A DNA stretch of 64,000 nt from Haliotis cracherodii (GCF_022045235.1 NW_027266264.1:47554001-47618000), one strand, 5' to 3'. Shown: positions 1 through 64,000, counted from the stretch's first letter. Notes: generated by a model not told the origin, from the letters alone. Program-made: numbers and translations.

Positions 1-242
1 TGTCCTTCCCGGATGGCGGAATACAAAATGCAGAGGTTGGGACCTCACTACAACCAGCCTAGCTTTAAATTTTTTATACACTTCACTGACAAAAGAGTAC
101 ACATGATTCTTTTCCCGAAAGATTTTTTTGCAAAACCCCTCCTCAAGCAGAACAGAGTCGATCTCTTTGGTCGGATTTAACGTAACTGTTGATGTCATTA
201 GTTCCTCAGACTCATCCCAGTGCAGACATGCAAGTAGTGGCC
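1..242 (-). CDS. Paralog G0 (partial, runs off left edge): N-terminal-domain exon of the VWA-MIB/HERC2-WWE family
   Basis: Not in the ORF track. After the acceptor ataacag at ~243 the minus frame is open to base 1: PLLACLHWDESEELMTSTVTLNPTKEIDSVLLEEGFCKKIFREKNHVYSFVSEVYKKFKARLVVVRSQPLHFVFRHPGRT. This matches G1 (LEWDE...KITGVRSQPFGLELVH), G2 (ARVVSVTLRPVTFVMRHPRR) and G3 (LHWED...). Confidence 0.8.
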
Positions 243-3200
243 CTGTTATAGGAACATCACAATATGTATCAACATGTAGGGTTTGCAGGAACATTAAAAG
301 TTTAAACATCAAATCGAACTTATCTCAGCCATTTTCTGACGAATCACAAGAATGATAAAACATGATAAATGAATTTATCCATGTATATCCTTTATAGATC
401 TGTATTTTTCTTTATGTAGGTTTCGATTTTAAATACACAAATTGTTCGATTAGCAGGCCCGTAAACCACTAGCTTTGTATCATTTAAACGGCCATTCCCC
501 ACATTTCCTCGTCTTTTTAATCATTGGTCAACCACCTTTCCCCCCTACACTAGATCATTCTAACCTACCCTTGTTTCATATCAAAATCGTTATTAGATCT
601 TTTTGTAAAATGAACTCCTCAGTTCCCGGAATCCGGATTATTCTCCCCCTAATACCATATATGTGTATCTAATAATCTCTTATTATACCTACTCTATTTC
701 TGATCGCTTGTATGTTCCTTCTGATGTTATTACTATCGTCATGCTCTGATATACAACATTCCTTTCTTGTCTATCTAACCTACTAGCTTTGCCTTGTATA
801 TCAGTGGCCAAGTGAATTTCTTCCCTAGGCTGTAGCTTCTTCCACCGGTCATTAACTATGAACTTTGTTAATTCTTAATATGTTTTTCCGACGCGTAGTC
901 TTCCTTATGCCTATGTTTTACTGTTTGCTTTGGGTTTCCCTTCAAATGTCTTATTATATATTTCTTTTTGTGTCTTACTGAATTGATAATTGCTGTAATT
1001 TCATGCCTATAAAACACTATGTTATAATGCTATGATCAAATTTACGTTTTGTTGTTATCTTGAAAAATGGTGTCCTTAACTTAACTTTTGTATGTTGTTG
1101 ATTATTGATGTATGTCTGCCGACAATGATAATATAAATTTATATATAGTTTCAGCCGATGCACTTCTACTTTCACTTTATTACTTAAACATGTGCAATGT
1201 ATGAGCTTCATATTACCTGTATGGGTGGAAGGTCTATTACATGTACCCACCTGCTTCACGAGAGCCTCCCTCAGAATACCCCTCGTTAAAAAAGCCATCC
1301 ACAACAATATGTGAGGGGTCATCTGTAATCACCCGCCCATTCAAAATACATCGAATATGTAGGTCAGCCATTGCAAACTACAAAGAAACAATCGTCACTG
1401 AATATCACAACCATACGATTTCTATTTTCACTTTGATACACGTTCGATTTCTGGTCAAATGTTCTCAAATCATTAGCGCATTACGAAACAAGGGAGGAAG
1501 GCGTACTTATCTGCACGTAGGCATTTCGTCTACCATGTTCCTGAACAGTTTTCAGTCGTATCCCCTAACTATCTAAATATAAACATGACATTGTAACCAT
1601 GACCTTGCTTCCTGACATTTCAGATTGGCGAGTTAGACTTCCCTTTCGGTTATCTTCCCTTAGTTGAATGTCTGGGAGCAGTTCGACTCTATATCTATAT
1701 CCATCTGTGTGTAAGTCTGTGTGCTGGATGTGTGTTGGTAATTTAAATCCTGATTTGTATTTTCATCCGTATAAGCGTATTGTCATTGCCAAGGGTACTA
1801 CACGTAGCCAGTGTTTCATACGTTTGTTTACATACATGTAAAGACTTGTTTGCAAAGCATGCCTAATAATGCAGTGTGCCCTCGTGTATCAATAGTCACA
1901 CTTCGTACGCTATATATATATAACAAGAACACCAATGAGAGACATGTATCAAAATTACAACTGTATTAAGGATAAGGATAAGTTTTATTCCATACTGAAT
2001 GGCCCCAGGCCCATAGTACAATTTTGTTTTCGGGAGTGGTTACAGTTATGTTTCACAGGTCATATTCTAATTAACGTAGCATGATACATGAACATTGATA
2101 GATTTTTTTAGAGTATTTTAATCAGTTGTTGACATGATCGATATAATTTTGTGTTGAGTGGGATGTACATAAAAAGGCAAATCAATATATTTGCTTCTTA
2201 GGTGGTGGTATTTTGGACAAACTGACAGAAAACGAAACTCATCTTCAATCATATTTAAATCACATTGCTCACATATTCTCAATTCTCTGGCTCTGTTCTG
2301 TTTCTATGTCTGCCTACTTCGAGCCTATGTCTATGAGAGTTGCATTTAAACTGTGTTCAACTTATTCTAAACCTTTTAAAATTGATATCAAACAAATAGT
2401 ATTCTGGGGAAATAGTTGTCTTACAAAACTTGTAATAATTGCATTTTTCTGAACTTAAAATTTTGGTGACCATTTTTGTAAGTAAATACCCTTGAGTCTT
2501 TGGCGTATAGATACTACAAACGAATTTGGATTGTTAGGTACACATCGATTATGTCAAAAATACCCACAGCCGCATTCATTTAATAACGACTTTACATCAT
2601 AAACCAAATTGCGGATTCCATGTTTTTCATATAATCACATTATATTATAACCTTTTCTAGGTAATCTATCATTACAACTGTATTGAATAATACATATTGC
2701 TTTATTCAAGTTAGATAATGTCCACCCCCGAGGTGGTTTCAAGATCTATAAGTAGACGTAAGGTTCGCTTGCCGTAGAGTTTTGCATTCTTACCATTACC
2801 TCCTTACCTACTTACAGGTATGTAGTCTAAGTAATTGTTTCCCTCGAATACACTGTGTTTTACTATGCTACACACACAAAAAAACGCACTTCAACAATTA
2901 AACTATATTTATTTTGGATAAACATTTCTCATATCAGTCAAAGAAATACTTCCATATATACATGGTATACCTGCTGACAACAACTATCTTATAAGAGTTC
3001 TACAGTAGGTATATATTTATGACTCAGTAAGCAAGAATATTAAAAAATGTCTCAATTTGCTTCAAATGCCATGTAAGAACGTCCATAATGAGATAATGAA
3101 GAGTGAGTGAGTGAGTAAGTTAAAGCCTTTTTAAACAATATTCCAGTTATATCCAGACGTGTCTGCTTAAGGTGGTACCACTTTGGAGAAACCCGGGAAC

Positions 3201-4020
3201 ACGGGTATGGTGCTGACACACCTAGAAACATTATAGAGGCGAAGCGGAATACCAACCCACAGTCATAGGTGTGTGTGATAACAGTTATTTTGTTGCTCAC
3301 AAGTTTGTATGTCATTACAAATGTTGTGAGGAGATCAACTAAATATCAAACCTTGCATGTTTTTTAGAATTATTAGACTTCATGATATTGTATTGCCACT
3401 AATAACCACTAAACAGATATCGCCCGGGAATTACTACAGCACATTTTTCTGACCGTGAGAGCATATGCGTCATATACGGATGAATGATATTTTTACAAGA
3501 AAACGTCTTTGGTTCTATTTCAGTGTGGATACTGTGGGTTCTGTACGATATGTCATGACAACAACATTCCAGACACTGGACGACAACCTGATCCACATCT
3601 ATAACATTGTCTGTTGTCCTTCATGTACTAGCAAAGTGACACTACTTCAATGACGATAAAGATCAGCTAATTGTGTCACACATCAGGAAATAAGTTGATT
3701 CACAATTCTATCTAGACAGATTTGGGGATCAATATTCACCACCAACGTCTTAGTGATTTGTTAATTGCAGTTCTCAAGAGACATATCTAAATGACTATTT
3801 TGATTGAATTCATAAAGTTTTCATGCTTATAATAACCTATATTTACATGATCATCACGCTTTAATATAGTCATAATCTCATCATTTTAATTATTAATGAC
3901 ATGACAAATACATAAATTGATATTAAAATGTACATGGTTCAATGAGTACTAAATAAGAATTAATACTTTTATAAAAACACTGAAATATATTCTTGAGTCC
4001 AATGAGTAAGGCAGCATGAT

Positions 4021-5641
4021 CTACACATCTCCCAGGTCGGTCTTACTCACACCTGCAAAAGAAGCCAAAGAATTATCGTCTGAGGTTATTTACGATTACT
4101 CTCCTAAAATTTCTTTACCTTTCCAAAGTTGATATATATCAATTGTTGCGGTCCGTAGGTGTCCGACTCATAAAACATTGAACCTCTCAATGTAAATTTG
4201 CCAAAAACATAAAATTGGCAATTTCAGAGTTAAATGTCAGTGTGAAAATCTAGTAGGTATCATTTATTAACAAGACACTGAAGCTTAGTAACGATTCTTT
4301 CATGAAACGGCGCAACCACTCACGTATTCTTCGCACTCTTCGCTTCGAGCTGCCATCGATACTTTTTTCTTGATAGTCTTTGAAGAGTACTCTGAAACTG
4401 TACCATATTTATTAGCATTGACATTGCAAACCCTTACTGTTAACAACATGATAAATATTAGCTTAGTTGTTTTCTATATTAAATCGAGAAAAGACATTAC
4501 TGATTGATTATACATACACTGTATTCAATACTAGACAAATTATTTGTTATATAATTTCGTCTGACGCTGTAGACACGAAAAGCTCATTGCCGGCCATAAC
4601 ACAGTACCAGTATACTATCTGCTAATAACTGGTAAATAGGTTTCTCCGAACCTCATTAAATGTTTTTAGGTCTGCTTTTCGACACATGTTGTGACAACAC
4701 TCATAAATCTTAGGAACATGCATCTATACCAATAGCCTGCAATATCTGGCAAATTGTTTTGTCCCGAAACGTAGTAATTGTTTTCAGATTTGTATTTCAA
4801 TACATTCTTTCACAACATACATACATCTTATGAATAGAATTTTTTACCAGTATCCTGATCATTACCTTGTGTTGTCTCTCTGTATAACACATGATCCTGT
4901 AGGGCGCCTCTGATATTCCTTCTCCAGTTTCATGATCTCTCGATCTCCATACAGTCGCCATTCATCTACCCCAGCCTCCCACTGCCACACCAACTGCGTC
5001 GCATCTGATTGCTCCACACTGGGTGCCCCTGCAATAGCTGTTAAAGAGATGAAACAGTCTGTCATTGATATTAGAAATGTCCCCCAAAGCAATATGGCTG
5101 TGACAAAGCTTCAATAAATACAGGATGGAGATGTTTACTTCGTGAATATAATACTAGTGTTATGTAGATATCAGTCTGCAAAATATCCATATACATAAAT
5201 GGTTATGGAAATGAAGCATTTACCGCCGTCTTGCAAATGTTGTTGGGGGGCAGCATCGGATTCATGGGAAGTCATTTCTGTCTGCGTCAGCTCCAGTAAG
5301 CAATCCGCCGGATCTCTGGTTTCATGGATGGAAGCAGATGTAGTATTAGTGTGCAAGATATGTGTGAATTGTGTCAACACATTCATGGGAATAAGCGCGT
5401 TATATCAGTCTTATACTAAATTGAAAATATGAACCGATGCCGAATTTTGTTTGAGAAGCTGCCAATCTAAACATATGACGTCTTAATATACCTGAGAGCC
5501 AGATCCAACTTGTCATTCTTCCCGAATCTGTATTCGTTGATGTGACCGTTTCGATTCCACCGGACCTACATAAATTATTTTTTGATATATAATTATACCA
5601 TGTTACTAATCTGTAATGAATAAAACATAAAAACCAGTACT

Positions 5642-5701
<60 letters not shown>

Positions 5702-6007
5702 AAATATTTCAACTATCATATATTTAAACTTTCCGTAAATTTATGTACAACAATTCCTTTAACAACTGTTACCTTAACTTTGCCCCGGTTGTTTTTGCGG
5801 ATGACAACCCCGAAGCCCCCCTTGCCTCCATCCTGGTCAGAATACTTGTCCCTCCAGTCTGGACCTGACAACAGACATTGGACATGAGAATACCGGCCGG
5901 GCAGCAGTTTTCTGGTATACATATTGGTTCATGCATACGTATTACTTTACTCAACGGCAGCAGTGAAAAACACAGTTGTCATCAATAAAATTGCTTGTAA
6001 TGACCTG

Positions 6008-6038
<31 letters not shown>

Positions 6039-6040
6039 TG

Positions 6041-6073
<33 letters not shown>

Positions 6074-9000
6074 CGGCGTAAAACCACACTTACTCATAGA
6101 GTAAGGACCAAACTGTACGAACGTAAGAGCTTTCAAAGTATCCATTTCTTCGTTTTGTTCACAAGGATGTGTCATAGGAGGCTACTCGATCACGACATGC
6201 CGTCAAACACTCTGACTTTATCCAATGCACGCAAAAACGCCGAGTTCAAGATTACAGTTTCTGAATGACCAGAAACAATGCTTCTCTACACCGTATGTAT
6301 TTGTGCTGGAGAATTGCCAGGGATGTGAAAGTAGTCCGTCAGTGTCAATGTCATTTCAAGAACAGAATTTGCTACAGTGAAACCACACTACGTATGTGTC
6401 GGCAAGTAAAAACTACAAAACCACTTCCATAATAATAGTAAATATCTGCTAAATATTTTTTACTCCAACTGTATTATAAGCATGTGTTTATGTATAACGT
6501 CAAAAAATGTGCCACGAGCGTCTGTTTCGCGGTCATGCGACAGGCCTCTTGTCCAGTGACAAAGCCGTGCGTCGTGTAAACTTATTATTAAGTTATATTA
6601 AAATATTTTAAAATGGCGTTTCTTTTCAGGTTAAATGTTTAACTAGTGATGTCATATCAACGTTCAAGATAGGGATGTACATGGGTATTGTTTCCATTTC
6701 ATCAAACAAAAAATACATTTCTTCACCTCTTGAAACCTCACATCCGATCTCTATCATCAGTCCCGATGCGGTTACCCTTGGTTGGTCGTGTACTAGGGTA
6801 AGATCCCTTGCGTTTTGATAACCATATCTGTATTGCTGACAACTGCCTTTGTCCCATGCAACCCACACCAGCTCTGTTACAACAAAGATATATCGCAACT
6901 TTCAAATATCGAATGAGGTACGATTGGTATTGATATTTTTACCATGATTTGTCATTAAGTTAACATTAAAATGGAATTCATTTCATTGTACACATTATGG
7001 CAGAGATAAACTTCACTTTTGTCCTCGTCGTCCCCCTCGGTGTGGTTGATGACTGTCCCCGGACCACCCGAATCCTGGTTACCCCATTTCCACTGTGGAC
7101 CTCGGACAACTCTAGACCCAAGCCGGGGTAGGCTCTCATCTTTGAATTCTACCACATTTCGAAAATTTTGGGTGAGATTCTCTGAAGAAAGGGCTAGTCT
7201 CTCAAGTCTCTCATCGATCTTTTTTTCAATAGCAGTAACGACAGTTCCCTGAAAAAAAAGTAGAGTACGTATGCATGTACCTTTTGTTTGCTTGTCTGTT
7301 GTTGAAAGCCGCACTCAGTTATATGATGTCGGTCTGTAAATAATCGACCAGACAATCCAGTGATTGACATAATGAGCATCGTTCTACGCAACTGGCATAC
7401 AATGACATGCATCACCCAAGTCATTGAGCCTGACCACGCGATCCCGTTAGTCGCCTCTTACGACAGATATAGTCGCCTTTTAGGGCGAGCATGGGTTGAT
7501 GAAGACCTGTTCAACCCCGGATCTTCACAGGTAACATGTATGTACATGTACGATCATGAGATGTTGCATGCATGTTAAAATGAAAATGTCTTATTTCTAA
7601 AATAGTTCGTCAAACAAACCTTGTCATCAGTGTCCAACTCATTGTCTATTCCGTCCACAATGGCAATGATGTCATCGGTATCGACTTCAGTTTCGTCCTC
7701 AGAAATCATCTTTTTCTTGATGACCATATAGGATTGTCCAATAATATTCTGCAAATATGTCAGGCATTAATCGTTTTTTAATTTAACTGTCTGATGAGTA
7801 GTACTACCCGTTATACCTATAAATATATCTACACATAAACTTCAACAAACAGTTTGCTTCATTGAAACAATACTGGATATTGCCTGCAACTAATGTTAAG
7901 CTACAAAGTTATAAGTATACAGTTTATAAAATGTATCAAAACATTGGTATGTTTTCAACCATTTAACGACGAGTTTAATTGTAGGGGGCTTTTGGAATAT
8001 TATATAACAAAACATCAACTTGTACTTTAAGAAATACCTGAATACGCTGGTACTTGCAAAGTTCACCAACATCTTCACGGTCTACCAGCGTACCGTTATC
8101 CATGTGTCCTAAGGTTTCTAGAAAATCCTGTAATTGACATGTAATACCTAAATTAAATAGTTTCCTCATAAAAAGGAAACATGACTGTTGTTTCGTGAAA
8201 CAAATTATTAACTTTTTTAGCAAGTTCTTCGTGTTTGAAATTTATTCAAAGGGGAAAGTATTGTGGTAAATTATTTTTTATTACATTTACTTGTATGCTG
8301 TCGATACATAGTGATATAGTGTCCATTTACATAATATTTATCACGATTTTACCTTTACTTCATAAAGTTTCTTTTTGGGATGAAAACCGACACTGATTCA
8401 GTTTACATTTGTTAAATGTTCCCTCGTTGAATAATCATTGTATAAGGTAAAATAAATATACGGTAACTATACCCTGTTCCCATTGCCAATAGGAACCCAG
8501 ACGAAAGAATTGGGGAATGCTGTCTCATTTTTCCTTTTTCCGAATTCTTCGATCAACCTGATAACTCGAACTTCTTCCTATGGAAATTTAGATATGTTTT
8601 GTTATCATGTTTCGATATTCCATCAACAAATTACCAAGGTATATTTAAAAGCGACAAAACCCTTTCTTTACCTATACGAAATCGCTGCTGAGCAATGCCT
8701 TTTACAATGACAACAAGAATTGTGCTGCATAAATACTTCTTGAATATTATGTTTACATACAATGCACATGTTTATGTTACTCCTGAAAGGCATACATGAA
8801 AATATTGCCATCAGTCTCACTGGTCGTACTAAAATGGATTTGCTGGCAACATGAAGTAACTGTTAGTACTCCTTGAGGTAAGAGACTCACATCACTTTCC
8901 ATATTCTCATCGTGTTCGGTCCTTCCAAGCTCATCAGCTGTACTTCCATCCGTAATGACGATTACTCTCGGTTGAACACGATTGACCCCCATGATGTCTA

Positions 9001-12000
9001 GATCACCACCTGTATATATTATATGGTTTCTAGAGAGTTTAACATGCACTGTTCTTGTCAATTTGTAACATTTTATCATAAACGATTTAATGGTGTTAAA
9101 ACAAAAGTTAAAGTACCTACCTCTTCCCAGAATGGCACAAAGGCAAACTAGAAGAGTTTCAAACATCCAGGAGCATCCACCAAGTTGTAGGTTGTCTGGA
9201 AAAGTAAATACCATGTTCGTATTAACTGTGAGGTCACTGAATGTTCACAACATAATTTCATGCTTTAATGATATGAAAAAGTGAATGAATCAAACACTGT
9301 ATAGATCGTCTTTTTAACTGCATAGATACTGACTAACCTATGACACTTCTCAGGCTTGAGTAGTCATTACTGAGATGATGGACAATGCGGGCGGGCCCCC
9401 CACATGACACGATAGCAATGTTCTCCTCCATCTCATAATCGGCGGCAGCATCTTCCACTCCTGCTCATAAAAATAGAGAATGAAGGTTTCATTACAAAAA
9501 GGGACAATATATTGAGCTATGTAAACCATTAAGATGAAGCGTTGTTTTGAGGCAGTTACCTTGATGCTACAATATAGTATGTGCACTGAATATTCCGTAT
9601 AATGATTACTCACCGTTTATGAAACTAAATGCAGTTTCCTTCATCTTTTTAAATCCGCTCTGTTTCATTGTGGCCGACGTGTCTAGACACAGGATGGTAT
9701 TCAGGCCTCTGGCAGTTGGGGGCATTGGAACATCTATGTACGAAAACCATACAAACATTATAGCTATACAGAAATATCATAAACTGTCACATTGTTGAAT
9801 GAATTTGTGAATAAGACAGGTAAGTGGTTTTGCAGTACTTTGTATTTTAAAAGATGTCAGCCTACCGTCCTTCATTGCAGATTCCACAGTGGCCACTAGT
9901 CTTCGGACACCAGCTGACGCTCCCTGAACACCATAGCGACTGAGGAAATGCCGCGCCCGACCTTAGAATTTAAAAGTATTTAAATTGATGGTAACATCGG
10001 TCTATTGCTTTTTTAAAATATTATTTACAAATTATCTTAGTGAACATGAAATAGAACCACTTACCAATGGGAGAATTGTAAGGGTGTTGTGATAGTGTTT
10101 GCGTGGGTGGCGAGTGTTACAGGTAGGGCAGGTCATGTTTACCATTGATTCGAACACCTGATGTCATCACTTATTTTCATTCATATGATTTTCCTGTCTA
10201 TTTTGCCTTTTTACGCCAAATGGAATCTGTTAAGTAAAGGCTTGACTCGGGATTCACGCGTGTAGCGTGTAAATGGTCACAAGAATAAAAGAGATATCAC
10301 TTACCCCCAGTGCAGCCTTCTAGTACTGATGAATGCAGTGATAAAGCCTCCACAGGTAAACTGGCTCGACAAAACGTTCACAACATTAGAATAAAACACA
10401 CTGGAACATTGAACATAAAATGAACCAATTAATCAAATTACATGACAAAATATATTGTCCTTAGTCGAAAACATTTTCAGAAGCAATAACCGTGTTGTTG
10501 TTTTGTAAAGATAATTACTTTCAAGATGATGCTACACTGAACCTATATTGAATATGTGCACGGTACCTTACCTCGCAGGTGGATTTTCAGAGTGACTATC
10601 CAGTGACTGGGATTCCGAGCAAGTTTTACTGCTTGAAGAGATGGATGACTCGAGAACAGACTGGACAACTGATGGGGGATTTTCTTGTTCAGCATCCTTC
10701 CCAGGCGACAGTGTTGATTTCAGGACAGACTGGCGTTCGAGGTGCAAGTCCTTCACTTCACTCGATAAGGAATAGTTTGCATGACTCTGTGTAGGTTCCT
10801 CCTCGTCAGAAAAGCAGTTATCATCATGAGACAGTTCCGACGTCAGGGACGGTAACAAAGTGTTATCTAGTTTGGGCTTGTCCATCCCCGAGGTTACTTC
10901 AAATGAACCAAGCATATGCTCTTCTTCACATCCCATGTCCTCTTCATGCTGCTGAACGCCTACGTTTATGACATTGTCATTACCATATTCTGCCTTAGTG
11001 TCATGTAGAAAAACCAGCGTCTCTTGGTGGGATCCTCCAGTTTCGTCAGAGATACCAATACCAATTCCATTGTGGTTTTTGTCAACTAAGTGCTGAACAG
11101 ACAGTGCCAGCTGCTTCACAGACTGCTTTAGTTCTTCATTAAAGGCCTTCTGCTCGTCAAACCGTTTTCTAACATCGACCTTTTGACGCTGTATGTCTTC
11201 CTCCAGTGAGCCGAAACGAACATCAATCTCAGAGTCTGAAAGCAGAATACTCCTGTCAATGTCAACTGAAGTCTATCACGTTTGAAAAAATCAGAAAGTT
11301 ACACGTTTAAATGGTTAGTTTTTATATACCACAGTGCAGGTTATGAGTGATGTTACCGTTGTATGAAGTGTCCAGTTTCTCAGGTTCTCCCAATGTCGAC
11401 CTGTTGGAACAAAAGTAAAGCATGAATGAAAGCAACGTCGATGCCATTACTTCAACGTTTTGCGTTTATTTGATACTATGCTGTTATCACGAAAAACACG
11501 TGCAATAAGGGAGTACAAAGAGATGTAGAGTTTGAGTGAACAGGCAATTTGCAACATCAGTATGAACAGGACATTAATGCAGTCTGGGTAAAATACAAAA
11601 GAGACATATTGTGACCTACTTTATGTCCTCTTCCTCTGACAAAATCATGACAGGCACATCTTCACTCTCAGTTTCCGATCCATATATGGTCATAGTATAT
11701 TCCATCTCTTCCGCTTGGAAACCCTGTTCATTGTCATGCGTGTGCAGAGTGAGATCAAGTGAGATATTCGTTTTAGTGCATTCCGAAAATACACCCTTTA
11801 AAACATTTTTGAGCTCACCAACTCGAGATGCTAAATTATCAAAGCCGTCTAGACTATAATGAACTAGTTCTAAACCAAACGGTTGACTTCGTACTCCTGT
11901 TATTTTAATTTGATATTCTTTGAATAATTTCGTTGCAAGTCTTCTTAGTGTTGTGAATCTATTTTCACACATCCCAAGGATAACGTTGATGAAATAATCC

Positions 12001-12529
12001 CCCCGTTCCTCGTGAAGGCATATCTCAGCAGTATAAGCAAATGTATTCTCTTGCGGATGTTCATCCCATTCCAGCGTGATGACAGTTTGATCATCTGAAA
12101 ATATATCCATCTCTTAACGTAGGATTTCAATGGAAAGGGTGTACACTGTAGTGTATCTACACTGTCTCAACATCACTTTATAACAACTAGAATGTGAATG
12201 TACACTACTCTGTTCATTTATTAGATTTCTTCTTAGATTGCCAGGCAAAGAATTAGAAACAAAATGTATATTTAATGCTTGGTATTACCATTAGTAGTTC
12301 TTCCATCTCGTAGTTGTTGCATTACACTTTCATCGAGAGAAATCTGCACAGTCTGAAAATCTTCACTTAAGGTCAACGATCTGGATCCTTTTATTTCATT
12401 GAATACCAGAGTCCCGTCAGGATCCCATGTGTCACGACTAGTTATGTGACCCATCTCCGTCATCTCCTGCAGCCGCTGCTTATGCTCCCGCTCATTCTTC
12501 TCCGAGTCAGGTTTCTTGCTTGCGTCCAT
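4021..12529 (-). CDS. Paralog G1: multi-exon N-domain/coiled-coil/IDR/VWA/2x MIB-HERC2/WWE protein
   Basis: GT-AG exons (approx.): 12529-12289, 12112-11620, 11400-11357, 11235-10572, 10360-10305, 9961-9866, 9733-9614 (TILCLDTSAT), 9460-9338 (EENIAIV..HHLSNDY), 9195-9121, 9009-8891 (PRVIVITDG), 8577-8473 (WVPIG), 8127-8038, 7748-7620, 7248-~7018 (LGSRVVRGPQWKWGNQDSGGPGTV), ~6872-6728, 5864-5773 (GPDWRDKYSDQDGGKGGFGVV), 5565-5492, ~5315-5224, ~5037-4866 (WQWEAGVDEWRLY..LEKEY), 4397-4324, 4052-4021 (TAG). Confidence 0.88.
5641..5699. repeat. (TA)n microsatellite
   Basis: Directly visible. Confidence 0.98.
6009..6070. repeat. (TATG)n microsatellite
   Basis: Directly visible. Confidence 0.98.
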
Positions 12530-27818: not shown

Positions 27819-27827
27819 CTATAAATA
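27819..27827 (+). promoter_or_regulatory. Candidate TATA box of G3
   Basis: CTATAAATA, with a strong donor gagg|gtaagt ~70 bp downstream at ~27895 and the coding-exon acceptor at 28527. Confidence 0.5.
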
Positions 27828-30440: not shown

Positions 30441-30484
<44 letters not shown>

Positions 30485-34939: not shown

Positions 34940-34979
<40 letters not shown>

Positions 34980-46529: not shown

Positions 46530-46612
<83 letters not shown>

Positions 46613-49600: not shown

Positions 49601-51791
49601 TATCAATATCCAAATTGTATAAAAGAAAAACAATAAAAACTATTACTATTGTTTAGCAACCATGAATACATATATGGTGCCATATATGATCCTGTGAACA
49701 AAATAGAAGTACTACCTATTGCATCCCTGAGACTTCCATAGTCGTTAGTTAAATGATGCAATACCCTCGGTCGCCCTCCAAATGTTACAAGTGCAACATT
49801 CTCTTCAATGTCATGTTTTTCTGCTGTTTCTTCAAGACCTGCACAGATGAGAAAAGCATGCTGAATCCAGGTGAACAAAGATTCGATGTGACAAGTGTAT
49901 CACAAACATATTTTACTAAACAGGCAAATTGCAATAATCATATTTAGTGGACAAATTTGCAACAATTTATTATGAAACGCATGTATTAGATCTGTAAGTA
50001 TGTGCTTTTAGATATGTGAATTTGTTACCCTTGATAAATCTTCGGAGGAAGTTTTTGATGTCCCTCAATGCATTGTCACTTATACTCTCGGATGTATCTA
50101 TGCACAAGACGGTGTCAAGAGAAGTTTCAGCCATCGGAATATCTCCCGCTACAAGAATATAAAGCTATACCATGTACAAATAGTTACATTAGTTGTACAT
50201 TATCGATAAGAGCAACTTTGACAAACTAACATCAATAATACTTTCGATCTCTTTTATGTTACGGGGTCAGTCATTAGATATTCGGGTTGGAGGTCTGAGA
50301 TTTTATATAGAGTCAGCTACAGCTGAAACACTAGATATTTTATTAAATAAAACTTTGAGCCTAAATATATTTTTTTATAAAAAACGCTTTGCAACAATGT
50401 GATTTTTGTGGCAAACATTTTCTTTGTTTCATCTGTAAATTACGCATTATCATTTTTTTCAAGCATTTTCGTGGACAATTTATTATGTCCCATAAAATAC
50501 CAGCCCCGAAACTGAAATGGTCGAACCAAAGTTATCAATAAGGAGTTTTTTAAAAGAAGTTGTTATTGGGATTATATTAACCAACTAATAATGAAGTCAA
50601 ACCTATTTCAAGTGCTTCCTCCACACCACGCCATAGTGAGCCATTGTAGGGGTTGCTGCTGTTGAGAACATCAATGCTCAGCAATGCTTGTATGCTTGCT
50701 CTGCCGGACCTACTAGCACCAGCCTTCCTTTTGCTCAACTTTGCCTCAAACCTTTCTCTACGAAACACAACATGCCCTTGCGATTAACCACTCGCGCTTT
50801 TTACTATTCATGAATAAGAGTTACCAAACTGCATACAATATTCTATGTATACAAAGGTAATTATTGGGTACAACCTTTGTGTACAGTATACTGTGATACC
50901 TTAAGTACCCGAGAGGTAGAAGTACTTTATCAAATACATGTTTAGTAAAGCTGGTACAATACGAATATTATTAGGGAGAAGGCGGTAATAAGTGTTGCAC
51001 TTGTGCCCAATGCCTTTGTCTTATTGGACAATAAAATATGTTTAATAATAACGAATATTATATATTGCCTGGAAATTTGTATAGGATTGCATCATTACTA
51101 CGATTAGTGCCAGACTATACCTTGTAGAAGGATCATTCAGTAATTGATCGGTGTGACCACCCATTTCCCTTCTCAACATGCGCTCCACCAGACCAACAGC
51201 ATCGTCCTCGGAGTCTGGGTTCAGCTCATCACAACTAACACCCGTCAGTCGCCCCACGGCTCTGAAGTCATCCACAGTCGCTACGGGTAACACTCTTGAA
51301 CGAAGAAACTGTCTCAATAAATCACTTAATGGACGAACGGTTGGTTTGTTATTCTTCCCCCTGACCAAGTGTCCTTTGGTTTCTATGATGCTTGTTTTGG
51401 AGGATGGGGGACTGTTTGGGGTGTCTTTTTGCAATGGACGATCAATCAGATCTGTTGCTGGTGTTGAAAATTTGTCGGCTTCTAACGTTCCAAGAACAAC
51501 CACAGTTTCGGAACTTCCAACCTCATATTCTACATGCTGCTGTTGGGTGGGTAGTGAACTAGTGTTGTCTGTAGGACTCTTGTCAGCCTCCTGCTCCCGG
51601 ATTTCAAACAACTGTGCATTGTCGGCAATCGATGCAAGCAACTGCATGAGGTTGGATCTCAAGTAAACATATTGTTGCCTTTGACGTTCAAACTCTGTCT
51701 CTATCAATATTCTCTGGGCATGTATTTCCGCTTCAATGGAAGCAAATCTCTGTCTTCTCCTTGTATTACGTTCACCTTGAAGGCTCCCCAT
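42440..51791 (-). CDS. Paralog G4: coiled-coil/IDR/VWA/2x MIB-HERC2/WWE; N-terminal domain apparently lost
   Basis: Exons approx.: 51791-51121, 50757-50603, 50149-50029 (DTVLCIDTSES), 49838-49716, 49548-49477, 49375-49257 (PRIVFLTDG), ~48985-48881, 48715-48626, 48423-48316, 47940-47742 (LPPLGSRVVRGPDWMWDNQD), 47546-47404, 47175-47093, 46922-46852, ~46701-46612, 45722-45557 (WWE), 43248-43169, 42444-42440 (TAA). The start codon is uncertain. Confidence 0.85.
43473..45570. repeat. 49-bp minisatellite, roughly 42-43 copies, in the WWE-splitting intron of G4
   Basis: Unit tactgccttgatataccattgtccatgtttctatactgaaatgtgcaac. A homogeneous block spans ~44950-45570 and a more variable subtype spans 43473-44950. 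Confidence 0.97.
45975..46535. repeat. ~190-bp tandem repeat, about 3 copies
   Basis: aggct..cgtaaaagtcatgc..tcactgatgcatgttcagttc..catgatttttgatggaattgcgc recurs from ~45976, ~46167 and ~46356. Confidence 0.9.
46535..46608. repeat. (CT)n microsatellite abutting a G4 splice donor
   Basis: Directly visible; on the minus strand it reads ACAG|gtgagagagag... Confidence 0.97.
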
Positions 51792-51888
51792 TATTGTACA
51801 GTCAGTTTGCTTAATGTTGCTGTTTCTCTAAACACATAAAACGTTTTGCCAGTTTGATTTATTTTCACTAATAATTTATGCCACGCAC

Positions 51889-58071: not shown

Positions 58072-61000
58072 TCATGGCGAGACAACAGCTACAATACCTG
58101 AAATACAACACCTCATGACAAACACACTGGACTCCAGCTTGTTTTTTTTTGCAGAATTGCCAGTCTAAAATACAATAAACGAAAAATAATTGTATACATG
58201 CTTGCGATAAATGTTACATCATAGTAATGTCTTTCTGTGACCAATCTCAATCTCAATCTCCTCTACCACATACAACAAGTACATATCTCACCCAGTCGCC
58301 GCACATCGTGCACTTCATTGCCAGACACCAACTTCTCAATCATCGGATCTTTCTTGAATACCACTCTAAAACTGAAATATATTATTTTACAATAAATGAA
58401 GAAATAAATACACGTAGTTCAAACTATTATAGATATAAATTGCCCTTGCAAGAGAATAATCAGTCTAGATTATCCGCCGAAACAGACTCCATGAGGCGTA
58501 AAGGGCAAAATAGCTGTAAAAATTATATATTATATCATATTATAGATACACTTTTTAATTGAATCATGCACAATGCCAGGCTACATACTCGTACCTTTTC
58601 CCATTTCTCTGTATCAAGCAAGATCCTTTAGCGTTTCTCTGAAACTCTTTCTCCAGTTTCCCAGTCGTCACAGCATCGTAAAGCCGCCACTTGCCCGTGC
58701 TATCACGCCACTGCCACACTACAACACACATGGAAGGTATGTAGGTGAACAGGAGGGGTAAAATGACCGTTGAAGATTCAGGTGTACAACAATGCTTTAG
58801 TGAAAACAAGATGAATACAAGAAACTACCGCACAATCCTCTCGGGGGATGGGCCGGAGGTAATGGATCCATGTACATACCGTGTACTTTAGTTGCCGTAG
58901 GTACGGGACTAGGTTTCCTTGGCCGTGTTTCCAAATCTGGTTTGCTGAAAATGTGATGTACTCCTTATAACAAACATCCATTGGCAAATCCTAAAAAGGT
59001 TGATTGTCCTGAGTATTGAATAAAATACATGAATGACATACAATTATGCAGGATGAAGAAAGAATTTCAGGAAATTTCATTTGGGAATTATAGTTTAGGA
59101 AATTTAGGGGGATCCTATTAAAGGATTATATATGCAAATGTTAGTTTTGTACCTAATGGATGGTAATTTTGTACCTAATGGGTGGTAATATTGTACCTAA
59201 TGGATGGTAGTTTTGAATAATATTTTGAATTCTTCTTGAAAGATAAGGTGAGTTGGGGGTTTAGAGTCGATTAGGATTATTGCACTTGTATAAGCGACGT
59301 GCATGCATGTACGTGTGTGTGGCTGCTTGTAGTCCGGACTAATGCAAATTTTATAGTGCTAGCCCAGTGAGATACCATGCCGCAGTTTAACATGAATACC
59401 CCACTAAGACACAGTATACAAACACCGAGCCGACCAGTCCTTGTTTTAGCCCCTTAATGCCAAGCGCCAGGCAGGGTGACAACAAGTGCCATCTTTTAGC
59501 GTTTTCTGGTATGACGCGGTCGGGGATCGAACCCCCGATCCTTCCGCTCTCCGGACAGACGCTCTGCCACTAGACCACGGAAGCGACCAGACAGAAAAGG
59601 CTACAGTTAGGAAAGTAAATAAGATTTATCATCGAATCCATTAAGTGACAATGCGTGTCACACACTGAGGCATGGACTTACTGAAGAATATTATTATCCC
59701 AAATAAGTACTGAATTTCAAAAAGGCCTTCCGAAATACATTAGTTACCAATCACAGAACGCTAGGCCGGGCATCATAAGACATCAACTGTCATCACTCAA
59801 CTGTAAGTCACCTATTGACAACAGAATCAGCTTCACTTACCATATTTCGAGGTCGAAACGTCCATCACAGCCATAGTTGTATGTACAAATTTTATCCGCA
59901 TCGATCCATCGAACCTGTAAAACATTTTACGTACCTAATCAGTCTTACAATTAAACCATGACACAATTATATATACAGATGACATGAAAAGTTACCAACA
60001 ATTACTGTGAAAAGTCTGACGGGCAGGAGTGAGAGAATAACGGTGGAAATTCTTGTGAAAGTGACACACTTAATTCTATGAGATATTAATAATGTCAAAA
60101 AATGCTCTAAACATAGTAGTAAAGAATGTCCGAGACACCTATGTTTACTTACCTTGACCTTTCCGTCTTGTGCTTTCCGGATCACGACCCCGTAACTTCC
60201 GGGTCCGCCATCCTGGTGTCCATACGTCCAATCTCGTCCTACGAATAGTACGATTTCACAACGTGAAAGTTGACTGCAGTGATTATGAAAACTTACTTCA
60301 AATTGCCACATAGTTCTTTGAAATTGTCACTGTCATGAGTATTATGCAAGAATATTACTTTGGTTGCGTCGATGTTTTAATGTGTTCTTTAGTTCATATC
60401 TAGGTTCCATATCAACCAACATGTATGCCTACCTCTTTGGACCTTGTTCCCTATTTCAATGAGTTCGTCATCACACAGGTACCGCGCAGTGTCCTGGACT
60501 AACAGATCGTAATTGTTCTCATACCCATATCTGTATCTACAGAATGTGGAGTTGAAATCCCAACACACCCAAACCAAATCTGAAAATAGAAGACCGGACG
60601 TCTTCAAATTGCATATGTATGAAGAATGATATTCCCCACTTTTCAACATGTTACACCTGAAATGTCAGATGTTTCTATCTATGATTCTTCATGTTATAGA
60701 GGTTTCACAAATGAACAGCTATTTTCAATTTAAAGACACCTTTAACTTCTTTTCATATTTGTGCTCCAATGGAATGAGTTTGCATTTACTATGTATTCAT
60801 CAAACAAGTTTTGTTCATAGTTGAAAAAAAAGACAAGTAATAGCAATTTCGATTATCAACATCATTAAGCAATATAAAAGTTCATTTTCTATCCTAATTA
60901 GCCGGCTTTTATTAATGGACCGATATTCTGATTTGTATCCTCTGAATACCAGTAACTAACTGGCGCTCGGCATTAAGGGCTAAAACAAGGACTGGTCGAC

Positions 61001-62618
61001 TAGGAGTCAGTTTTCTGTGTTTAAGTGAGGCATCCGTGTTCAACTGAGGCAGGGTATTTCAGTGGGCCAGCACAACANNNNNNNNNNNNNNNNNNNNNNN
61101 NNNNNNNNNNNNNNNNNNNNNNNNNNNNNNNNNNNNNNNNNNNNNNNNNNNNNNNNNNNNNNNNNNNNNNNNNNNNNNNNNNNNNNNNNNNNNNNNNNNN
61201 NNNNNNNNNNNNNNNNNNNNNNNNNNNNNNNNNNNNNNNNNNNNNNNNNNNNNNTCACCGTCGGAAATCTGACACATTTTAAGAGAACTTACTGTCTTCT
61301 TTGGCATGATTAACCACTGTTCCTGGTCCGCCGCTGTCCTGGTCACCCCACTTCCAGTCGGGGCCCCTGCAGACCCTCGTCCCAAGGGCAAGCAGGGCCT
61401 TCTTCTCTCGGAGGCGTTTGAAGTCGTTCGGTTCCATATTATCATCATCATCATCACTGTCCGTGTCCTTGTGGTCAAGCTTCCTCTTCACTGCTTCCAC
61501 TACCGCGGACTGAATAAATGAAATTAATGGCTAAATAGAAATAATCATATCCCCAGCCAATGGTAATGTGCAATTGAGTGCAAGATCCAAACCCAACACC
61601 AGCTGCCTGGGACTTGTTCCAAAGAGTCAATGCGACCTAATCAATACCTGATTGATATGCTACCAATTGACTGGTACCTTTAGCTATCTCAGTACGATGT
61701 GAAGATGACGAGCTTATCATTGAATACACTTGGGTTGTTTCTATGGAATTGACAAAAAAAAACAAATCGAAAATGGTAAACCATGATGAACAATTGATTG
61801 ATATATGTTCGTTATGAAAACCGGGAACAAAACATTTTTAAGATCTAAATTCCTTAAAGGGGACGGAACATTCATCATATGCCTCTCCGGGGCAAAAATG
61901 AATTGAAGGATATCATTTACTAATATCCAAGACTACTGAAACACAGTAATGACCGTAATATCATACCCCACCTTTTCTGCTGGATCCATCTCTCCGACCA
62001 GGGCCTCTGCTACAGTTTCTATGCTGCTAGACATAGAACCCGTCATATGCTGAGTCTGTATACAGAGCAGGATTTTTCCTATGCTTCCCTGTTGTAACAT
62101 GAGTACAAAGGTAGTTAACGGTAAAACGTTGACGAGAATCACATAGGGATCCGAGTACCATGCGAACAACGAGACTCGAATACTTGAAGTCAAGAACATA
62201 TCTGTAATTTTCATAGGATCACTAAGGCACAGTTCTTATTAGTATCGGATTGTTTATTGATTGATAGCGTGTTTGCAATGAGAAAATCCTCCGCATTTAT
62301 TTTCTTGTAAAGATGTGTGATTTATATACCTGGAATCTGTAGTTCTTGCAGAGTCTCGCCATGTCCTCGCCTTCCACCAGCTCTCCTTGCCCAAGTTTGG
62401 CCAACGATTTTAAAAAGCCCTGAAATTTACCAGAACATGTGCATTTTGATCTGTATTATTAAATAGCTTATAGTTGACTCAAACGGCCAATGTATGGCTA
62501 TATGTGTGTGAGCAGAAAACAGACTTGAAGATGAAGCCCAAGACAGTGCAGAACGCTGGCGGTTACCGCTTTGTTGAGTCCACAATACAAGCACTAAGCC
62601 CATATCGGCGTGAGTGGA

Positions 62619-62653
<35 letters not shown>

Positions 62654-64000
62654 ACACATTTCTAAAAAAGACATGATATTTCTGACAAGTCAGAATCATC
62701 TTCCTACTCACTGTATCTGCCTTTCCAACTGGAACCCATACTATTGGATGAGGTGCGGAACTGTTATTCTTCGGCGTAAATTGTTGAACAAGTTGAATCA
62801 GCTTAACTTTGGTCTAGGGAAAACACACATGGAAGCCATGTCACATCACATCTTACTTGAACAGTAACAGAAATCATCACCACAACCTGCTACTCATTTA
62901 CAGGATTCATACTAGTATATAGACCCCAGAAAAATATATTATTGGTGTACTCTTTACTTGTGTAGGTTGGGGAGATGTAGAATATGTATGGAAATAAACA
63001 TAGTACATGGCAATATATACAGCGGGTGAGGGTGGAAGAGATCTGGGTTTAACGCTGCTTTTAACAGTATTCCAGTTCTATGTTCAGTTCGTGTATTCTC
63101 GTACAAGACCTCTCTCAACTACCTAACGCCACAAAGCTTGTGAATAGTGAAACAGACAACCTTTCACATAACTATCAGGAAAAACCTCTGCAATGGCACT
63201 TATGATAGCTGACTCGTAATCAGTCTGAAACACCTCTGGAGAAAGTTCTGTACCAGTTCTGGTTCCTACTGTCCTTCAACAACCTAAATAGTCTAACATA
63301 TGTCTGTTTGGTCTTGTTAGGAAGCAACGAAAAAGCAACAGGATACATTTTACCATTTACAAGACAATGAATAATATACACTTGGAGCCACAAGCTAGGA
63401 CAAACAGAAAAAGTACCATCCTTAAACAAACTGTCAGAGTCACTTCACTTTGAACCTCTATGCCGCTTGGATTAGATTAGAGCTTGGATTAGTTAACAGC
63501 CTGAGATGGACAATGTACATTCATATAATAGGGGTGAGGCAATTAAGCATTTGAATTATTGTAGGCGAAATGAGGTGTAGGCGAAATGAGGGCAAGCCCT
63601 ATGACGGCATGTCAGCTTAATGAAAACCCGAAGTGATGCAGGTCTCATATATGTACCACTTCGGTGAAACCCACGAGCATGGGGATGGTGCTGACAAACC
63701 CAGAACCATAATCAGAGTGAATCGGAATTCGAACCCACAATCAAAGGTTTCTGATGTGCCGAAGCTACGCAACTCTGCACGACTGAGCCACCCTGACTCC
63801 ATATACACAGTGAACTAGAAATATCGACGTTTGCGCATTGACGGGGAACATATCCAGCCCCCAGTGACCATGCTCATTAATCTTACGTCATGGTCAGAAC
63901 TCCCCCCATCCGAGCCGGTCCAGCGGGCATAGCTTGTTGCTAATCCATCGGTTACAACAATAAGCCGAGGTCGGATCTTGTGTGCGTCACCAATACTTAG
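58072..64000 (-). CDS. Paralog G5 (5' part beyond right edge): VWA C-terminal half, 2x MIB-HERC2, WWE
   Basis: Exons approx.: 64000-63887 (RPRLIVVTDG), 62813-62712 (PIVWVPVG), 62419-62330, 62088-61972, 61509-61293 (LGTRVCRGPDWKWGDQDSGGPGTV), 60578-60434, 60238-60153, 59914-59841, 58944-58880, 58718-58595 (WQWRDSTGKWRLY..LEKEF), 58371-58292, 58097-58072 (TGA). Confidence 0.87.
61078..61254. other. Assembly gap (N run) in a G5 intron
   Basis: Run of n characters. Confidence 1.
63120..63600 (-). mobile_element. Mutator-like (MULE) transposase fragment in a G5 intron
   Basis: DGTFSVCPSLWLQVYIIH..YPVAFSLLPNKTKQTY, then after a frameshift TDYESAIISAIAEVFP..VKGCLFHYSQALWR. Short direct repeats TGTAGGCGAAATGAGG at ~63560-63591. 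Confidence 0.85.

What the first reader, a model, noticed from the sequence alone, without database searches (positions are those of the whole stretch)
1..64000. Tandem cluster of at least six divergent paralogs with an unnamed architecture: N-domain / coiled coil / IDR / VWA / 2x MIB-HERC2 / WWE
Seen: the same ordered exon set, with largely matching intron phases, recurs. It covers VWA (hhhCLDxSxS/T, EENIAhV..HHLSNDY, PRhIhhTDG, WVPVG), two MIB/HERC2 repeats (G.RV.RGPDW.W.NQD.G.PGTV..WD....YRYG) and a terminal WWE. The cluster continues off both edges. Established: MIB/HERC2 is a substrate-binding module of E3 ligases (Mind bomb, HERC2, HECTD1), and WWE binds ADP-ribose in RNF146, Deltex and several PARPs. 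Here each protein ends right after the WWE and I see no RING, HECT or PARP domain. Inference: a lineage-expanded family of non-catalytic adaptors, sensors or decoys linking ADP-ribosylation to ubiquitin signalling. Tandem expansion with strong divergence resembles invertebrate innate-immune families.
Basis: partly seen in the sequence, partly recalled or inferred. Interest (0 to 1): 0.9.

Follow-up and report, generated by a model that had tools for sequence, protein, structure and literature searches.

The report
Abalone TRADD-N-like VWA-MIB-WWE gene cluster
This black-abalone stretch holds six neighbouring, expressed genes of a 25-gene tandem family of enzyme-less scaffold proteins; the same domain order, with a CARD in front, is already listed for a brachiopod among TRADD-N immune and cell-death proteins, but nobody has studied its function.

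Summary
The window (Haliotis cracherodii, C1:47,554,001-47,618,000) carries five genes and the 5' end of a sixth. They belong to a family with 25 tandem copies spread over about 430 kb. Each gene has about 18 coding exons, and the intron phases are identical in the genes I could compare.

The encoded proteins have this order: short N-terminal strands, a ~150-aa alpha/beta domain, a ~50-residue helix, ~250 disordered residues, a VWA domain with its metal-binding motif, two MIB/HERC2 domains, then WWE. They end 2-6 residues after the WWE. No RING, HECT, PARP or Death-fold domain was found. Spliced transcript contigs from three studies confirm gene C's last seven splice junctions that were shown. 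The assembly gap lies in an intron of gene E.

The architecture is not unnamed. Kaur et al. [quoted passage not shown] The abalone N-domain looks TRADD-N-like by fold and by language-model neighbours, but it fails the Pfam and profile-profile tests.

The paralogs are old. Each has its own orthologs in other Haliotis species.

The scan found this family before on other DNA of the same cluster (s1-826172, s1-837242). Function is inferred only: a non-catalytic immune or cell-death adaptor.

The parts
1..1371 (-). Gene F, 5' end only. Exon 1 is 1249-1371. The N-domain exon is 1-243 and continues off the left edge.
   Evidence: P0051 (H. cracherodii, 1037 aa) maps at 100% identity: residues 1-41 and 41-121. 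Its Pfam hits are VWA, two MIB_HERC2 and WWE.
4322..12529 (-). Gene A, complete. By homology it has 19 coding exons, with one extra intron that splits the pre-VWA exon.
   Evidence: Guided by P0012 (H. rubra ortholog). The model is an open frame with GT..AG borders. The exon 3/4 junction was resolved by hand: donor at 10571, exon 4 at 10360-10305. No transcript check was done.
11620..12094 (-). Gene A, N-domain exon (TRADD-N-like alpha/beta domain).
   Evidence: Profile A3 scores 146 bits here. The ESM Atlas neighbours are TRADD-like_N clusters, score 0.92.
16181..26294 (-). Gene B, complete, 18 coding exons. It equals RefSeq protein P0056 (1167 aa).
   Evidence: My exon model translates to exactly 1167 aa with no stop. 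Intron phases are 1,2,2,1,1,1,1,0,0,0,0,1,1,0,2,1,2.
25450..25876 (-). Gene B, N-domain exon.
   Evidence: ESM Atlas score 0.94 to TRADD-like_N clusters.
23792..25024 (-). Gene B, large exon 3. It encodes a long helix (residues 200-251), a disordered stretch of about 250 aa, and a B-specific tyrosine-rich beta segment.
   Evidence: Full-length AF2 model. The B-specific segment is shown.
20065..23249 (-). Gene B, exons 5-11: the VWA domain and a helical linker.
   Evidence: Pfam VWA_2 at residues 653-769. Foldseek matches VWA domains.
17325..19894 (-). Gene B, exons 12-15: MIB/HERC2 domains 1 and 2. Each domain is split by one intron.
   Evidence: Pfam MIB_HERC2 1e-21, two stretches. PDB MIB1 4xi6 at 1.3e-10. 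Foldseek 4xi6 and 4xi7.
16181..16758 (-). Gene B, exons 17-18: the WWE domain and the protein's end.
   Evidence: Pfam WWE 37.2 bits at residues 1101-1165. The WWE exon profile matches the DTX1 WWE at 1.4e-8. P0056 ends at ...VRMT, and a GTGA donor follows, so a further UTR exon supplies the stop codon.
28539..40215 (+). Gene C, complete, 18 coding exons, stop codon TAG at 40216-40218. It lies head to head with gene B.
   Evidence: The model is 1096 aa with no stop. It is 92-100% identical, domain by domain, to H. rufescens P0004. Six splice junctions among exons 11-18 are seen in transcript contigs.
29149..29602 (+). Gene C, N-domain exon.
   Evidence: AF2 model m71b5a64c2d48, pLDDT 80: beta-beta-alpha-beta-beta-alpha-beta with both helices kinked. 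TRADD-N 1f3v gives TM 0.47.
30090..31097 (+). Gene C, large exon 3 (helix, acidic run, disordered linker).
   Evidence: No Pfam hit.
32203..34847 (+). Gene C, exons 5-11: the VWA domain and linker.
   Evidence: Pfam VWA_2 on the exons. The MIDAS motif DTSGS...SP...SDG is present.
35419..38975 (+). Gene C, exons 12-15: two MIB/HERC2 domains.
   Evidence: Pfam on the exons. RNA junctions at 35587/35905, 36046/36604 and 36692/38903.
39590..40215 (+). Gene C, exons 17-18: the WWE domain.
   Evidence: Pfam WWE. RNA junctions at 39383/39588 and 39758/40137. One contig runs about 500 nt past exon 17, which is exon 18 plus 3'UTR.
43170..51791 (-). Gene D. It equals RefSeq protein P0054 (795 aa). It starts inside the large exon and has no exon 1 and no N-domain.
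   Evidence: Exact mapping. No N-domain relic lies upstream. Its orthologs P0052 and P0055 are equally short (836 and 853 aa).
43474..45566 (.). A 49-bp minisatellite of 42.8 copies. It fills gene D's last coding intron and starts at the donor site of the WWE exon.
   Evidence: Tandem Repeats Finder. P0054's WWE exon ends at about 45558 and the next exon is 43250-43170.
58293..64000 (-). Gene E, 3' part: eleven exons from the end of VWA to WWE. The 5' part lies off the right edge.
   Evidence: Guided by P0024 (H. asinina ortholog). The frame is open and the phases are 0,0,0,0,1,1,0,2,1,2.
61078..61254 (.). Assembly gap. It lies inside gene E's intron between the MIB1a and MIB1b exons.
   Evidence: The flanking exons are 61509-61293 and 60579-60433, and the guide protein is contiguous across them. 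I left the gap untouched.

Best explanation
What it is. These are intact, transcribed members of an abalone-lineage expansion. There are 25 tandem genes, of which at least 14 carry the recognisable N-domain. They encode intracellular proteins with no enzyme domain.

Domain order: a TRADD-N-like RRM-fold domain, a long helix (probable coiled coil), a disordered linker, a VWA domain with a MIDAS metal site, two MIB/HERC2 peptide-binding domains, and a C-terminal WWE. This is the abalone counterpart, without CARD, of the 'CARD+TRADD-N+coiled-coil+vWA+MIB_HERC2x2+WWE' proteins listed for the brachiopod Lingula among lineage-specific TRADD-N expansions.

Proposed working, which is inferred and not shown. 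The C-terminal half acts as reader and binder. WWE would read an ADP-ribose-type mark, the MIB domains would bind short peptide motifs, and VWA would bind a protein ligand through its metal site. The helix would let the protein self-associate. The fast-diverging N-domain would pass the signal to a downstream partner, as TRADD-N does with the TRAF2 MATH domain. The likely setting is immune or cell-death signalling, with the paralogs differing mainly in the N-terminal output half.
For: Shown here:
- Gene models and identical intron phases.
- Exact RefSeq proteins for B, D and F.
- Spliced contigs from 4 runs in 3 studies at the predicted borders of gene C.
- Pfam VWA, two MIB_HERC2 and WWE above cut-off.
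- A full-length AF2 model with exactly this order of folded and disordered parts.
- Structural matches to MIB1 MZM-REP and to VWA domains.
- MIDAS residues kept in most members.
- The WWE profile matches the DTX1 and TRIP12 WWE domains.
- No RING, HECT, PARP or Death-fold domain.
- 25 copies in one 430-kb cluster.
- Every window gene has its own ortholog group across Haliotis species.

Evidence that the N-domain is TRADD-N-like:
- The AF2 fold has a beta sheet and two kinked helices.
- The best TM-score is to TRADD-N 1f3v (0.47, probability 0.97).
- Two paralogs that share only about 14% identity both land on TRADD-like_N clusters in the ESM Atlas (0.94 and 0.92, 15 of 30 hits each).
- A TRADD-N domain occupies the same position in the same downstream architecture in Lingula (PMC8195603, supplementary file 18).
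- One abalone protein joins four N-domains to ankyrin repeats (P0019). This parallels the TRADD-N plus vWA or ankyrin fusions described in cnidarians.
Against: - The Pfam models TRADD_N and TRADD-like_N do not hit the N-domain, although PF20694 finds three other loci in this genome.
- hhalign against a DEDD-clade alignment gives a probability below 1%.
- The conserved small-residue-plus-serine motif in the beta2-beta3 turn is replaced by x-Pro in most copies.
- There are no expression data by tissue or after challenge, no binding data, and no check of the WWE ADP-ribose pocket.
- The dimer prediction gave no verdict.
- The old, stable 1:1 orthology is less typical of arms-race immune families.
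Confidence: 0.6

Rival explanations
1. These proteins are substrate adaptors or regulators that work in trans with a separate E3 ligase in ordinary physiology, for example PAR-dependent ubiquitination or control of receptor endocytosis of the Mind-bomb type. They would have no particular immune or cell-death role.
For: MIB/HERC2 and WWE domains are known almost only from E3 ligases and PARPs. The closest solved relatives are MIB1, HECTD1, DTX1 and TRIP12. The paralogs have been kept as 1:1 orthologs for a long time.
Against: A 25-copy tandem expansion with only 10-25% identity in the N-terminal half is unusual for housekeeping adaptors. The family sits in a published list of TRADD-N expansions, with CARD in front in Lingula. 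No partner ligase is known.
Confidence: 0.2
2. These proteins are decoys or guards. They would display MIB, WWE and VWA modules as bait for pathogen effectors that target the host ubiquitin or ADP-ribose machinery, and the N-domain would trigger the response.
For: All catalytic parts are absent while the binding modules are kept. There are many paralogs with a conserved C-terminal half and a variable N-terminal half.
Against: This is pure inference. The most conserved parts are the supposed baits (MIB about 52% identity), with no sign of diversification there. No effector is known.
Confidence: 0.1
3. The array is largely decaying duplicates without function.
For: D lacks the N-terminal exons. 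A 2.1-kb minisatellite fills D's last coding intron. I found no H. cracherodii protein record for A, C or E in the collections I searched.
Against: All reading frames are open with canonical splice sites. Orthologs are conserved in four species, including the short form of D. Spliced transcripts exist for C.
Confidence: 0.03

Closest known systems
[quoted passage not shown] 2021, eLife, Figure 4-source data 1; PMC8195603)
   Same: The order of modules from the TRADD-N position to the C-terminal WWE is the same. Sizes are similar (about 1200 aa). Both are lineage-specific multi-copy families of marine invertebrates. Neither has been studied functionally.
   Different: The abalone proteins have no CARD or other Death-fold domain. 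Their N-domain is too divergent for the Pfam TRADD models. Haliotis is absent from that data set. I could not fetch the Lingula sequences, so direct homology of the N-terminal halves is untested.
Bivalve VWA-MIB_HERC2x2-WWE proteins, for example Mizuhopecten yessoensis 'HERC2-like protein 3' (P0073, 908 aa), and proteins of Pecten, Ylistrum, Argopecten, Sinanodonta and Potamilus
   Same: The C-terminal core is the same, at 28-36% identity over 76-96% of the query region, and the Pfam domains are the same.
   Different: Their N-terminal ~450 residues are not matched by the abalone N-domain profile, apart from one Pinctada VWA protein at 2.5e-5. They form separate clades in the tree.
TRADD and DEDD2 (TRADD-N superfamily; PDB 1F3V and 1F2H)
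   Same: Both have an RRM-like two-layer alpha/beta fold with two kinked helices. Both sit at the N-terminal adaptor position of a multi-domain signalling protein.
   Different: There is no detectable sequence-profile similarity. The conserved serine turn is not kept. No Death or DED domain is attached.
Mind bomb 1/2, HECTD1 and HERC2 (MIB/HERC2 domains); Deltex, RNF146 and TRIP12 (WWE domains)
   Same: The MIB/HERC2 and WWE domains are homologous.
   Different: All of those proteins carry a RING or HECT ligase domain. The abalone proteins carry none, and have a VWA domain instead.

Membership tests
VWA (PF00092 / PF13519) | Profile match above the curated cut-off, and an alpha/beta Rossmann-like fold | tested here: met
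   VWA_2 scores 27.9-54.6 bits (cut-off 27) in B, D, F and the orthologs of A, C and E. Foldseek matches factor B, CLCA1, Rpn10 and vWF A1.
VWA (PF00092 / PF13519) | MIDAS metal site: DxSxS, then Thr or Ser, then Asp | tested here: met
   The alignment shows DTSGS, DTSES, DTSAT or DYSST, then ...SP..., then T/SDG in all window genes. A few other paralogs are degenerate, for example DNSGD. Positions were read from the alignment, not from a structure with bound metal.
MIB_HERC2 (PF06701) | Two profile matches above cut-off, and likeness to solved MIB domains | tested here: met
   77-92 bits (cut-off 33.5), two stretches each. PDB MIB1 4xi6 at 1.3e-10 and HECTD1.
WWE (PF02825) | Profile match above cut-off | tested here: met
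   B 37.2, F 26.6, D 21.9 and the C ortholog 22.5 bits, against a cut-off of 21.1. The exon profile matches the DTX1 WWE at 1.4e-8 and TRIP12.
WWE (PF02825) | Residues that bind iso-ADP-ribose, as in RNF146 | not tested
   I had no reliable residue map. RNF146 aligned only at E 8.1.
TRADD-N superfamily | RRM-like two-layer fold with a four-stranded sheet and two kinked helices (Kaur et al. 2021) | tested here: met
TRADD-N superfamily | Conserved small-residue-plus-Ser motif in the beta2-beta3 turn | tested here: not met
   In the 14 paralogs the turn is mostly x-Pro (YAP, SQP, LRP, ASP...). Only L015 has GS.
TRADD-N superfamily | Match to Pfam TRADD_N, TRADD-like_N or NCOA6_TRADD-N, or a profile-profile match | tested here: not met
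   There is no hit even at E up to 10. The genome scans with PF09034 and PF20694 miss the cluster. hhalign probability is below 1% against the DEDD clade.
TRADD-N superfamily | Nearest neighbours in protein language-model feature space | tested here: inconclusive
   Two divergent paralogs score 0.94 and 0.92 with 215 and 205 shared features. 15 of 30 hits each are TRADD-like_N clusters, and all named families belong to the TRADD-N group. This is supportive, but it is neither an alignment nor a statistic.
E3 ubiquitin ligase or PARP | A RING, HECT, U-box, RBR or PARP catalytic domain | tested here: not met
   None was found in 34 plus 26 family proteins scanned. The proteins end 2-6 residues after the WWE.
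Death-fold plus TRADD-N 'constant region' of invertebrate TRADD-N expansions | A CARD, DED or Death domain next to the TRADD-N domain | tested here: not met
   No Death-fold Pfam hit in any Haliotis member. Exon 1 encodes only 41-80 residues, predicted as beta strands.

The most novel reading that the evidence does not exclude
Abalones may run a signalling system that needs no Death-fold domain. A battery of about 25 WWE/MIB/VWA sensors would read pathogen- or stress-induced ADP-ribosylation. Each sensor would be wired through its own diverged TRADD-N-like head to a different output. This would be a gastropod branch of the TRADD-N immune systems, which the published survey found expanded among molluscs only in bivalves.
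Probability: 0.2. Interest if true: 0.75.

Novelty: new variant of a known kind. Interest (0 to 1): 0.45.

Why it matters
The finding extends the published catalogue of TRADD-N-type immune and cell-death adaptor expansions to a gastropod. In its data set (Pomacea, Aplysia, Biomphalaria), Kaur et al. 2021 counted only 2-4 TRADD-N proteins per gastropod genome. The abalone form has no CARD or DED, and its head domain escapes the standard domain models.

The family gives a defined, transcribed gene set for asking what a WWE domain reads when no ligase is attached. All 25 genes lie at one locus, and each window gene has orthologs in the other Haliotis species compared.

Black abalone is endangered by an infectious disease (my own knowledge, not tested here). 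A large candidate immune locus could therefore matter for resistance studies.

All functional statements are still inference.

Tried and rejected
- Pfam on the N-domain and the large exon found nothing.
- The PDB sequence search with the N-domain profile found nothing.
- Genome scans with PF09034 and PF20694 did not hit the cluster.
- hhalign of the N-domain against the DEDD-clade TRADD-like_N alignment was negative, both with 14 and with 51 sequences.
- A search for relatives of the abalone TRADD-like_N ORF at L020 returned nothing, so I could not build a broader TRADD-N profile.
- I looked for a Death-fold, caspase or other front domain in the long Haliotis members and in nine bivalve relatives and found none. 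I saw no caspase.
- I looked for an N-domain relic upstream of gene D and found none.
- Rfam and the tRNA scan of the window found nothing.
- Eight stray ORFs outside the family exons have no Pfam hit.
- Complex prediction on two copies of gene B residues 1-260 gave no verdict (score 0.00). This is evidence neither for nor against self-association.
- The careful tree did not finish in the time allowed, so I used a FastTree tree, with its long-branch caveats.
- Literature searches for the architecture in molluscs found no study of the family.
Searches were done exon by exon by reference, or with database protein ids. Joined translations of A, C and E were used only inside scripts, for frame checks, identity tables and the tree.

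Full report
Source and content of the window. The window is eukaryotic DNA with about 38% G+C. Exact matches to RefSeq proteins show it is Haliotis cracherodii, at G000:C1:47,554,001-47,618,000. Motif scans and an all-against-all comparison of stop-to-stop ORFs show the same ordered set of short coding blocks five times. The first two blocks of a sixth copy lie at the left edge.

Gene models. I mapped database proteins onto the window and refined the borders at GT/AG sites.
- Gene B (minus strand, 16181-26294) has 18 coding exons. Its translation is exactly the 1167-aa RefSeq protein P0056.
- Gene D (minus strand, 43170-51791) is P0054 (795 aa).
- Gene F (minus strand) is P0051 (1037 aa). Only its exon 1 (1249-1371) and part of its N-domain exon (1-243) are in the window.
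- Gene C (plus strand, 28539-40215) gives an open 1096-aa model. It is 92-100% identical, domain by domain, to H. rufescens P0004.
- Gene A (minus strand, 4322-12529) is open and canonical, with one extra intron in the pre-VWA exon.
- Gene E (minus strand, 58293 to beyond 64000) contributes its last eleven exons.

The intron phases of B and C are identical: 1,2,2,1,1,1,1,0,0,0,0,1,1,0,2,1,2. E's ten introns match the last ten of that series. B and C lie head to head, and C and D lie tail to tail.

The assembly gap. The gap at 61078-61254 lies in the intron between E's MIB1a exon (61509-61293, followed by GTAAGT) and its MIB1b exon (60579-60433). The guide protein runs from one exon into the other without missing residues. 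The gap therefore does not touch coding sequence. I neither filled nor bridged it.

Transcripts. I laid contigs of four public runs (three studies, coded organisms A and B) on 34700-40400. They show GT..AG junctions at 34846/35418, 35587/35905, 36046/36604, 36692/38903, 39383/39588 and 39758/40137. Allowing for the stated offset of one or two bases, these are exactly my borders of gene C's exons 11-18. One 2726-nt contig joins exons 11 to 17, and it runs on for about 500 nt, which covers exon 18 and the 3' UTR. The contigs differ from the window by a few percent, so some may come from a sister species. The runs are only guessed to be RNA, but removal of introns at canonical sites shows that they are. 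Only gene C was tested this way.

Protein architecture. Pfam finds VWA, two MIB_HERC2 and WWE above the curated cut-offs in B, D, F and in the orthologs of A, C and E. It finds nothing else. A full-length AlphaFold2 model of gene B, built with a 50-sequence family alignment (mean pLDDT 69), gives the following:
- residues 1-165: a folded alpha/beta head,
- 200-251: one long helix,
- 254-500: no confident structure,
- 651-860: VWA,
- 869-903: helices,
- 930-1060: two beta-rich MIB domains,
- 1103-1166: WWE.

Foldseek matches the MIB1 MZM-REP structure and many VWA domains. The MIDAS motif (DxSxS/T, Ser, Asp) is kept in all window genes. A profile of the WWE exons matches the DTX1 and TRIP12 WWE domains. 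The region after the head collects weak hits to coiled-coil families. All family proteins end 2-6 residues after the last WWE strand.

- The WWE domain is split over exons 17 and 18.
- In B, D and E a GTGAG donor directly follows the last coding exon, and the RefSeq proteins end there. One more exon, nearly all UTR, must therefore supply the stop codon or the last residue.
- D starts inside the large exon and has no head domain, with no relic upstream. Its H. asinina and H. rubra orthologs are equally short.

Size and age of the family. The MIB1a exon profile finds 25 copies, all between C1:47,292,867 and 47,722,847. The only other hits in the genome are weak ones to ordinary MIB proteins. The head-domain profile finds 14 copies in the same interval.

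Within the window the paralogs share about 52% identity in the MIB domains, 41% in WWE, 37% in VWA, and only 15-16% in the head domain and the large exon. A FastTree tree has local support only and carries long-branch warnings. It places all Haliotis members in one clade, apart from the scallop and unionid proteins. It gives each window gene its own group of orthologs from H. rubra, H. asinina or H. rufescens. The expansion therefore predates the split of these abalones, and the copies have been kept since.

Range outside abalone. The VWA-MIB-MIB-WWE core is found in scallops (one is named 'HERC2-like protein 3') and in unionid mussels. Beyond these, only ordinary MIB1/MIB2 ligases match. The head-domain profile, searched against 1.84 billion proteins, finds 34 cluster representatives:
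- most are abalone proteins with this architecture,
- one abalone protein has four head domains and ankyrin repeats,
- one is a Pinctada VWA protein,
- one is a Littorina protein.

What the head domain is.

Evidence for:
- The AF2 model (pLDDT 80) is a beta sheet packed against two helices, both kinked. Kaur et al. give this as the hallmark of the TRADD-N fold.
- TRADD-N 1f3v gives the best TM-score of all Foldseek hits (0.47).
- Two paralogs that share only about 14% identity both land on TRADD-like_N clusters in the ESM Atlas.

Evidence against:
- No Pfam TRADD model matches.
- hhalign against a DEDD-clade alignment is negative.
- The conserved serine turn is replaced by x-Pro.

The literature tips the balance. 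Figure 4-source data 1 of Kaur et al. [quoted passage not shown] A TRADD-N domain therefore sits at exactly this position in exactly this architecture in another lophotrochozoan. Haliotis is not in that data set, and the paper's text does not discuss this architecture. I could not fetch the Lingula sequences, so the link is by architecture and not by alignment. I put the TRADD-N assignment at about 0.75.

Interpretation. The facts shown are these: a real, transcribed, old and stably retained 25-gene tandem family of enzyme-less multi-domain proteins. The mechanism is inferred from what the domains do elsewhere.
- WWE domains read ADP-ribose-type marks.
- MIB/HERC2 domains bind peptide motifs.
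- MIDAS-type VWA domains bind protein ligands through a metal.
- Long helices oligomerise.
- TRADD-N domains recruit partners such as the TRAF2 MATH domain.

The most likely role is a non-catalytic adaptor or sensor in immune or cell-death signalling. This fits the company such architectures keep in the published TRADD-N expansions. A role as a trans-acting adaptor of a separate E3 ligase in ordinary physiology cannot be excluded. A decoy role is possible. Decay is unlikely. The dimer prediction gave no verdict.

Relation to earlier notes of this scan. The same family was reported in two other windows of this cluster (s1-826172, s1-837242). My count of 25 agrees with '24-gene cluster'. The 'CARD at the front' claim is confirmed through the published Lingula table only, and I saw no caspase. 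The minisatellite note (s1-843381) is confirmed: 42.8 copies of a 49-bp unit fill D's last coding intron, starting at the WWE exon's donor site.

Limits.
Exon references or database ids were used instead.
- Transcript support covers only the 3' half of gene C.
- The models of A and E rest on homology.
- Nothing here tests function.

Noticed in passing
window 43474-45566: A 49-bp minisatellite of 42.8 copies (90% matches) fills almost the whole last coding intron of gene D. It begins at the donor site of the WWE exon, so the unit repeats the exon end plus the splice donor about 43 times. The RefSeq model uses the first copy.
   Followed up: partly
window 36037-36418 and 39857-40047; similar copies at 59280-59570, 60915-61058, 63559-63815, 3055-3345, 41524-41791 and 25155-25360: Two interspersed repeat families sit in introns of the family genes. 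They attract enormous contig depth in the RNA runs (up to about 185,000), so they are abundant, transcribed repeats genome-wide. They have no Rfam, tRNA or Pfam match.
   Followed up: partly
window 7197-7575, 19017-19245, 20568-20800, 27369-28203, 55664-55847: Another dispersed repeat, 55-86% identical as translated, lies in introns and intergenic DNA of the cluster, in both orientations.
   Followed up: no
window 56947-57422: A 33-bp tandem repeat of 14.4 copies (98% matches) lies in the 6.5-kb spacer between genes D and E. It creates long ORFs on both strands, which are artefacts.
   Followed up: no
gene B, protein residues about 470-560 (window about 23900-24180, minus strand): A tyrosine/serine/asparagine-rich segment is predicted as a three-stranded beta meander (pLDDT 74-86). 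It is present only in gene B and its H. rubra ortholog P0009, and its meaning is unknown.
   Followed up: partly
P0019 (H. rufescens LOC124128465; not in the window): This protein has four tandem copies of the head domain followed by ankyrin repeats. It shows that the head domain is a mobile module. It parallels the published TRADD-N plus ankyrin fusions.
   Followed up: partly
L018 (G000:C4:43970995-43971168), L019 (C34), L020 (C6): The abalone genome has three loci that do match Pfam TRADD-like_N. L018 is the DEDD/DEDD2 ortholog exon, about 89% identical to bird DEDD.
   Followed up: partly
window 26294-28539: Genes B and C are arranged head to head, with only 2.2 kb between their first exons. 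They may share a bidirectional promoter region.
   Followed up: no
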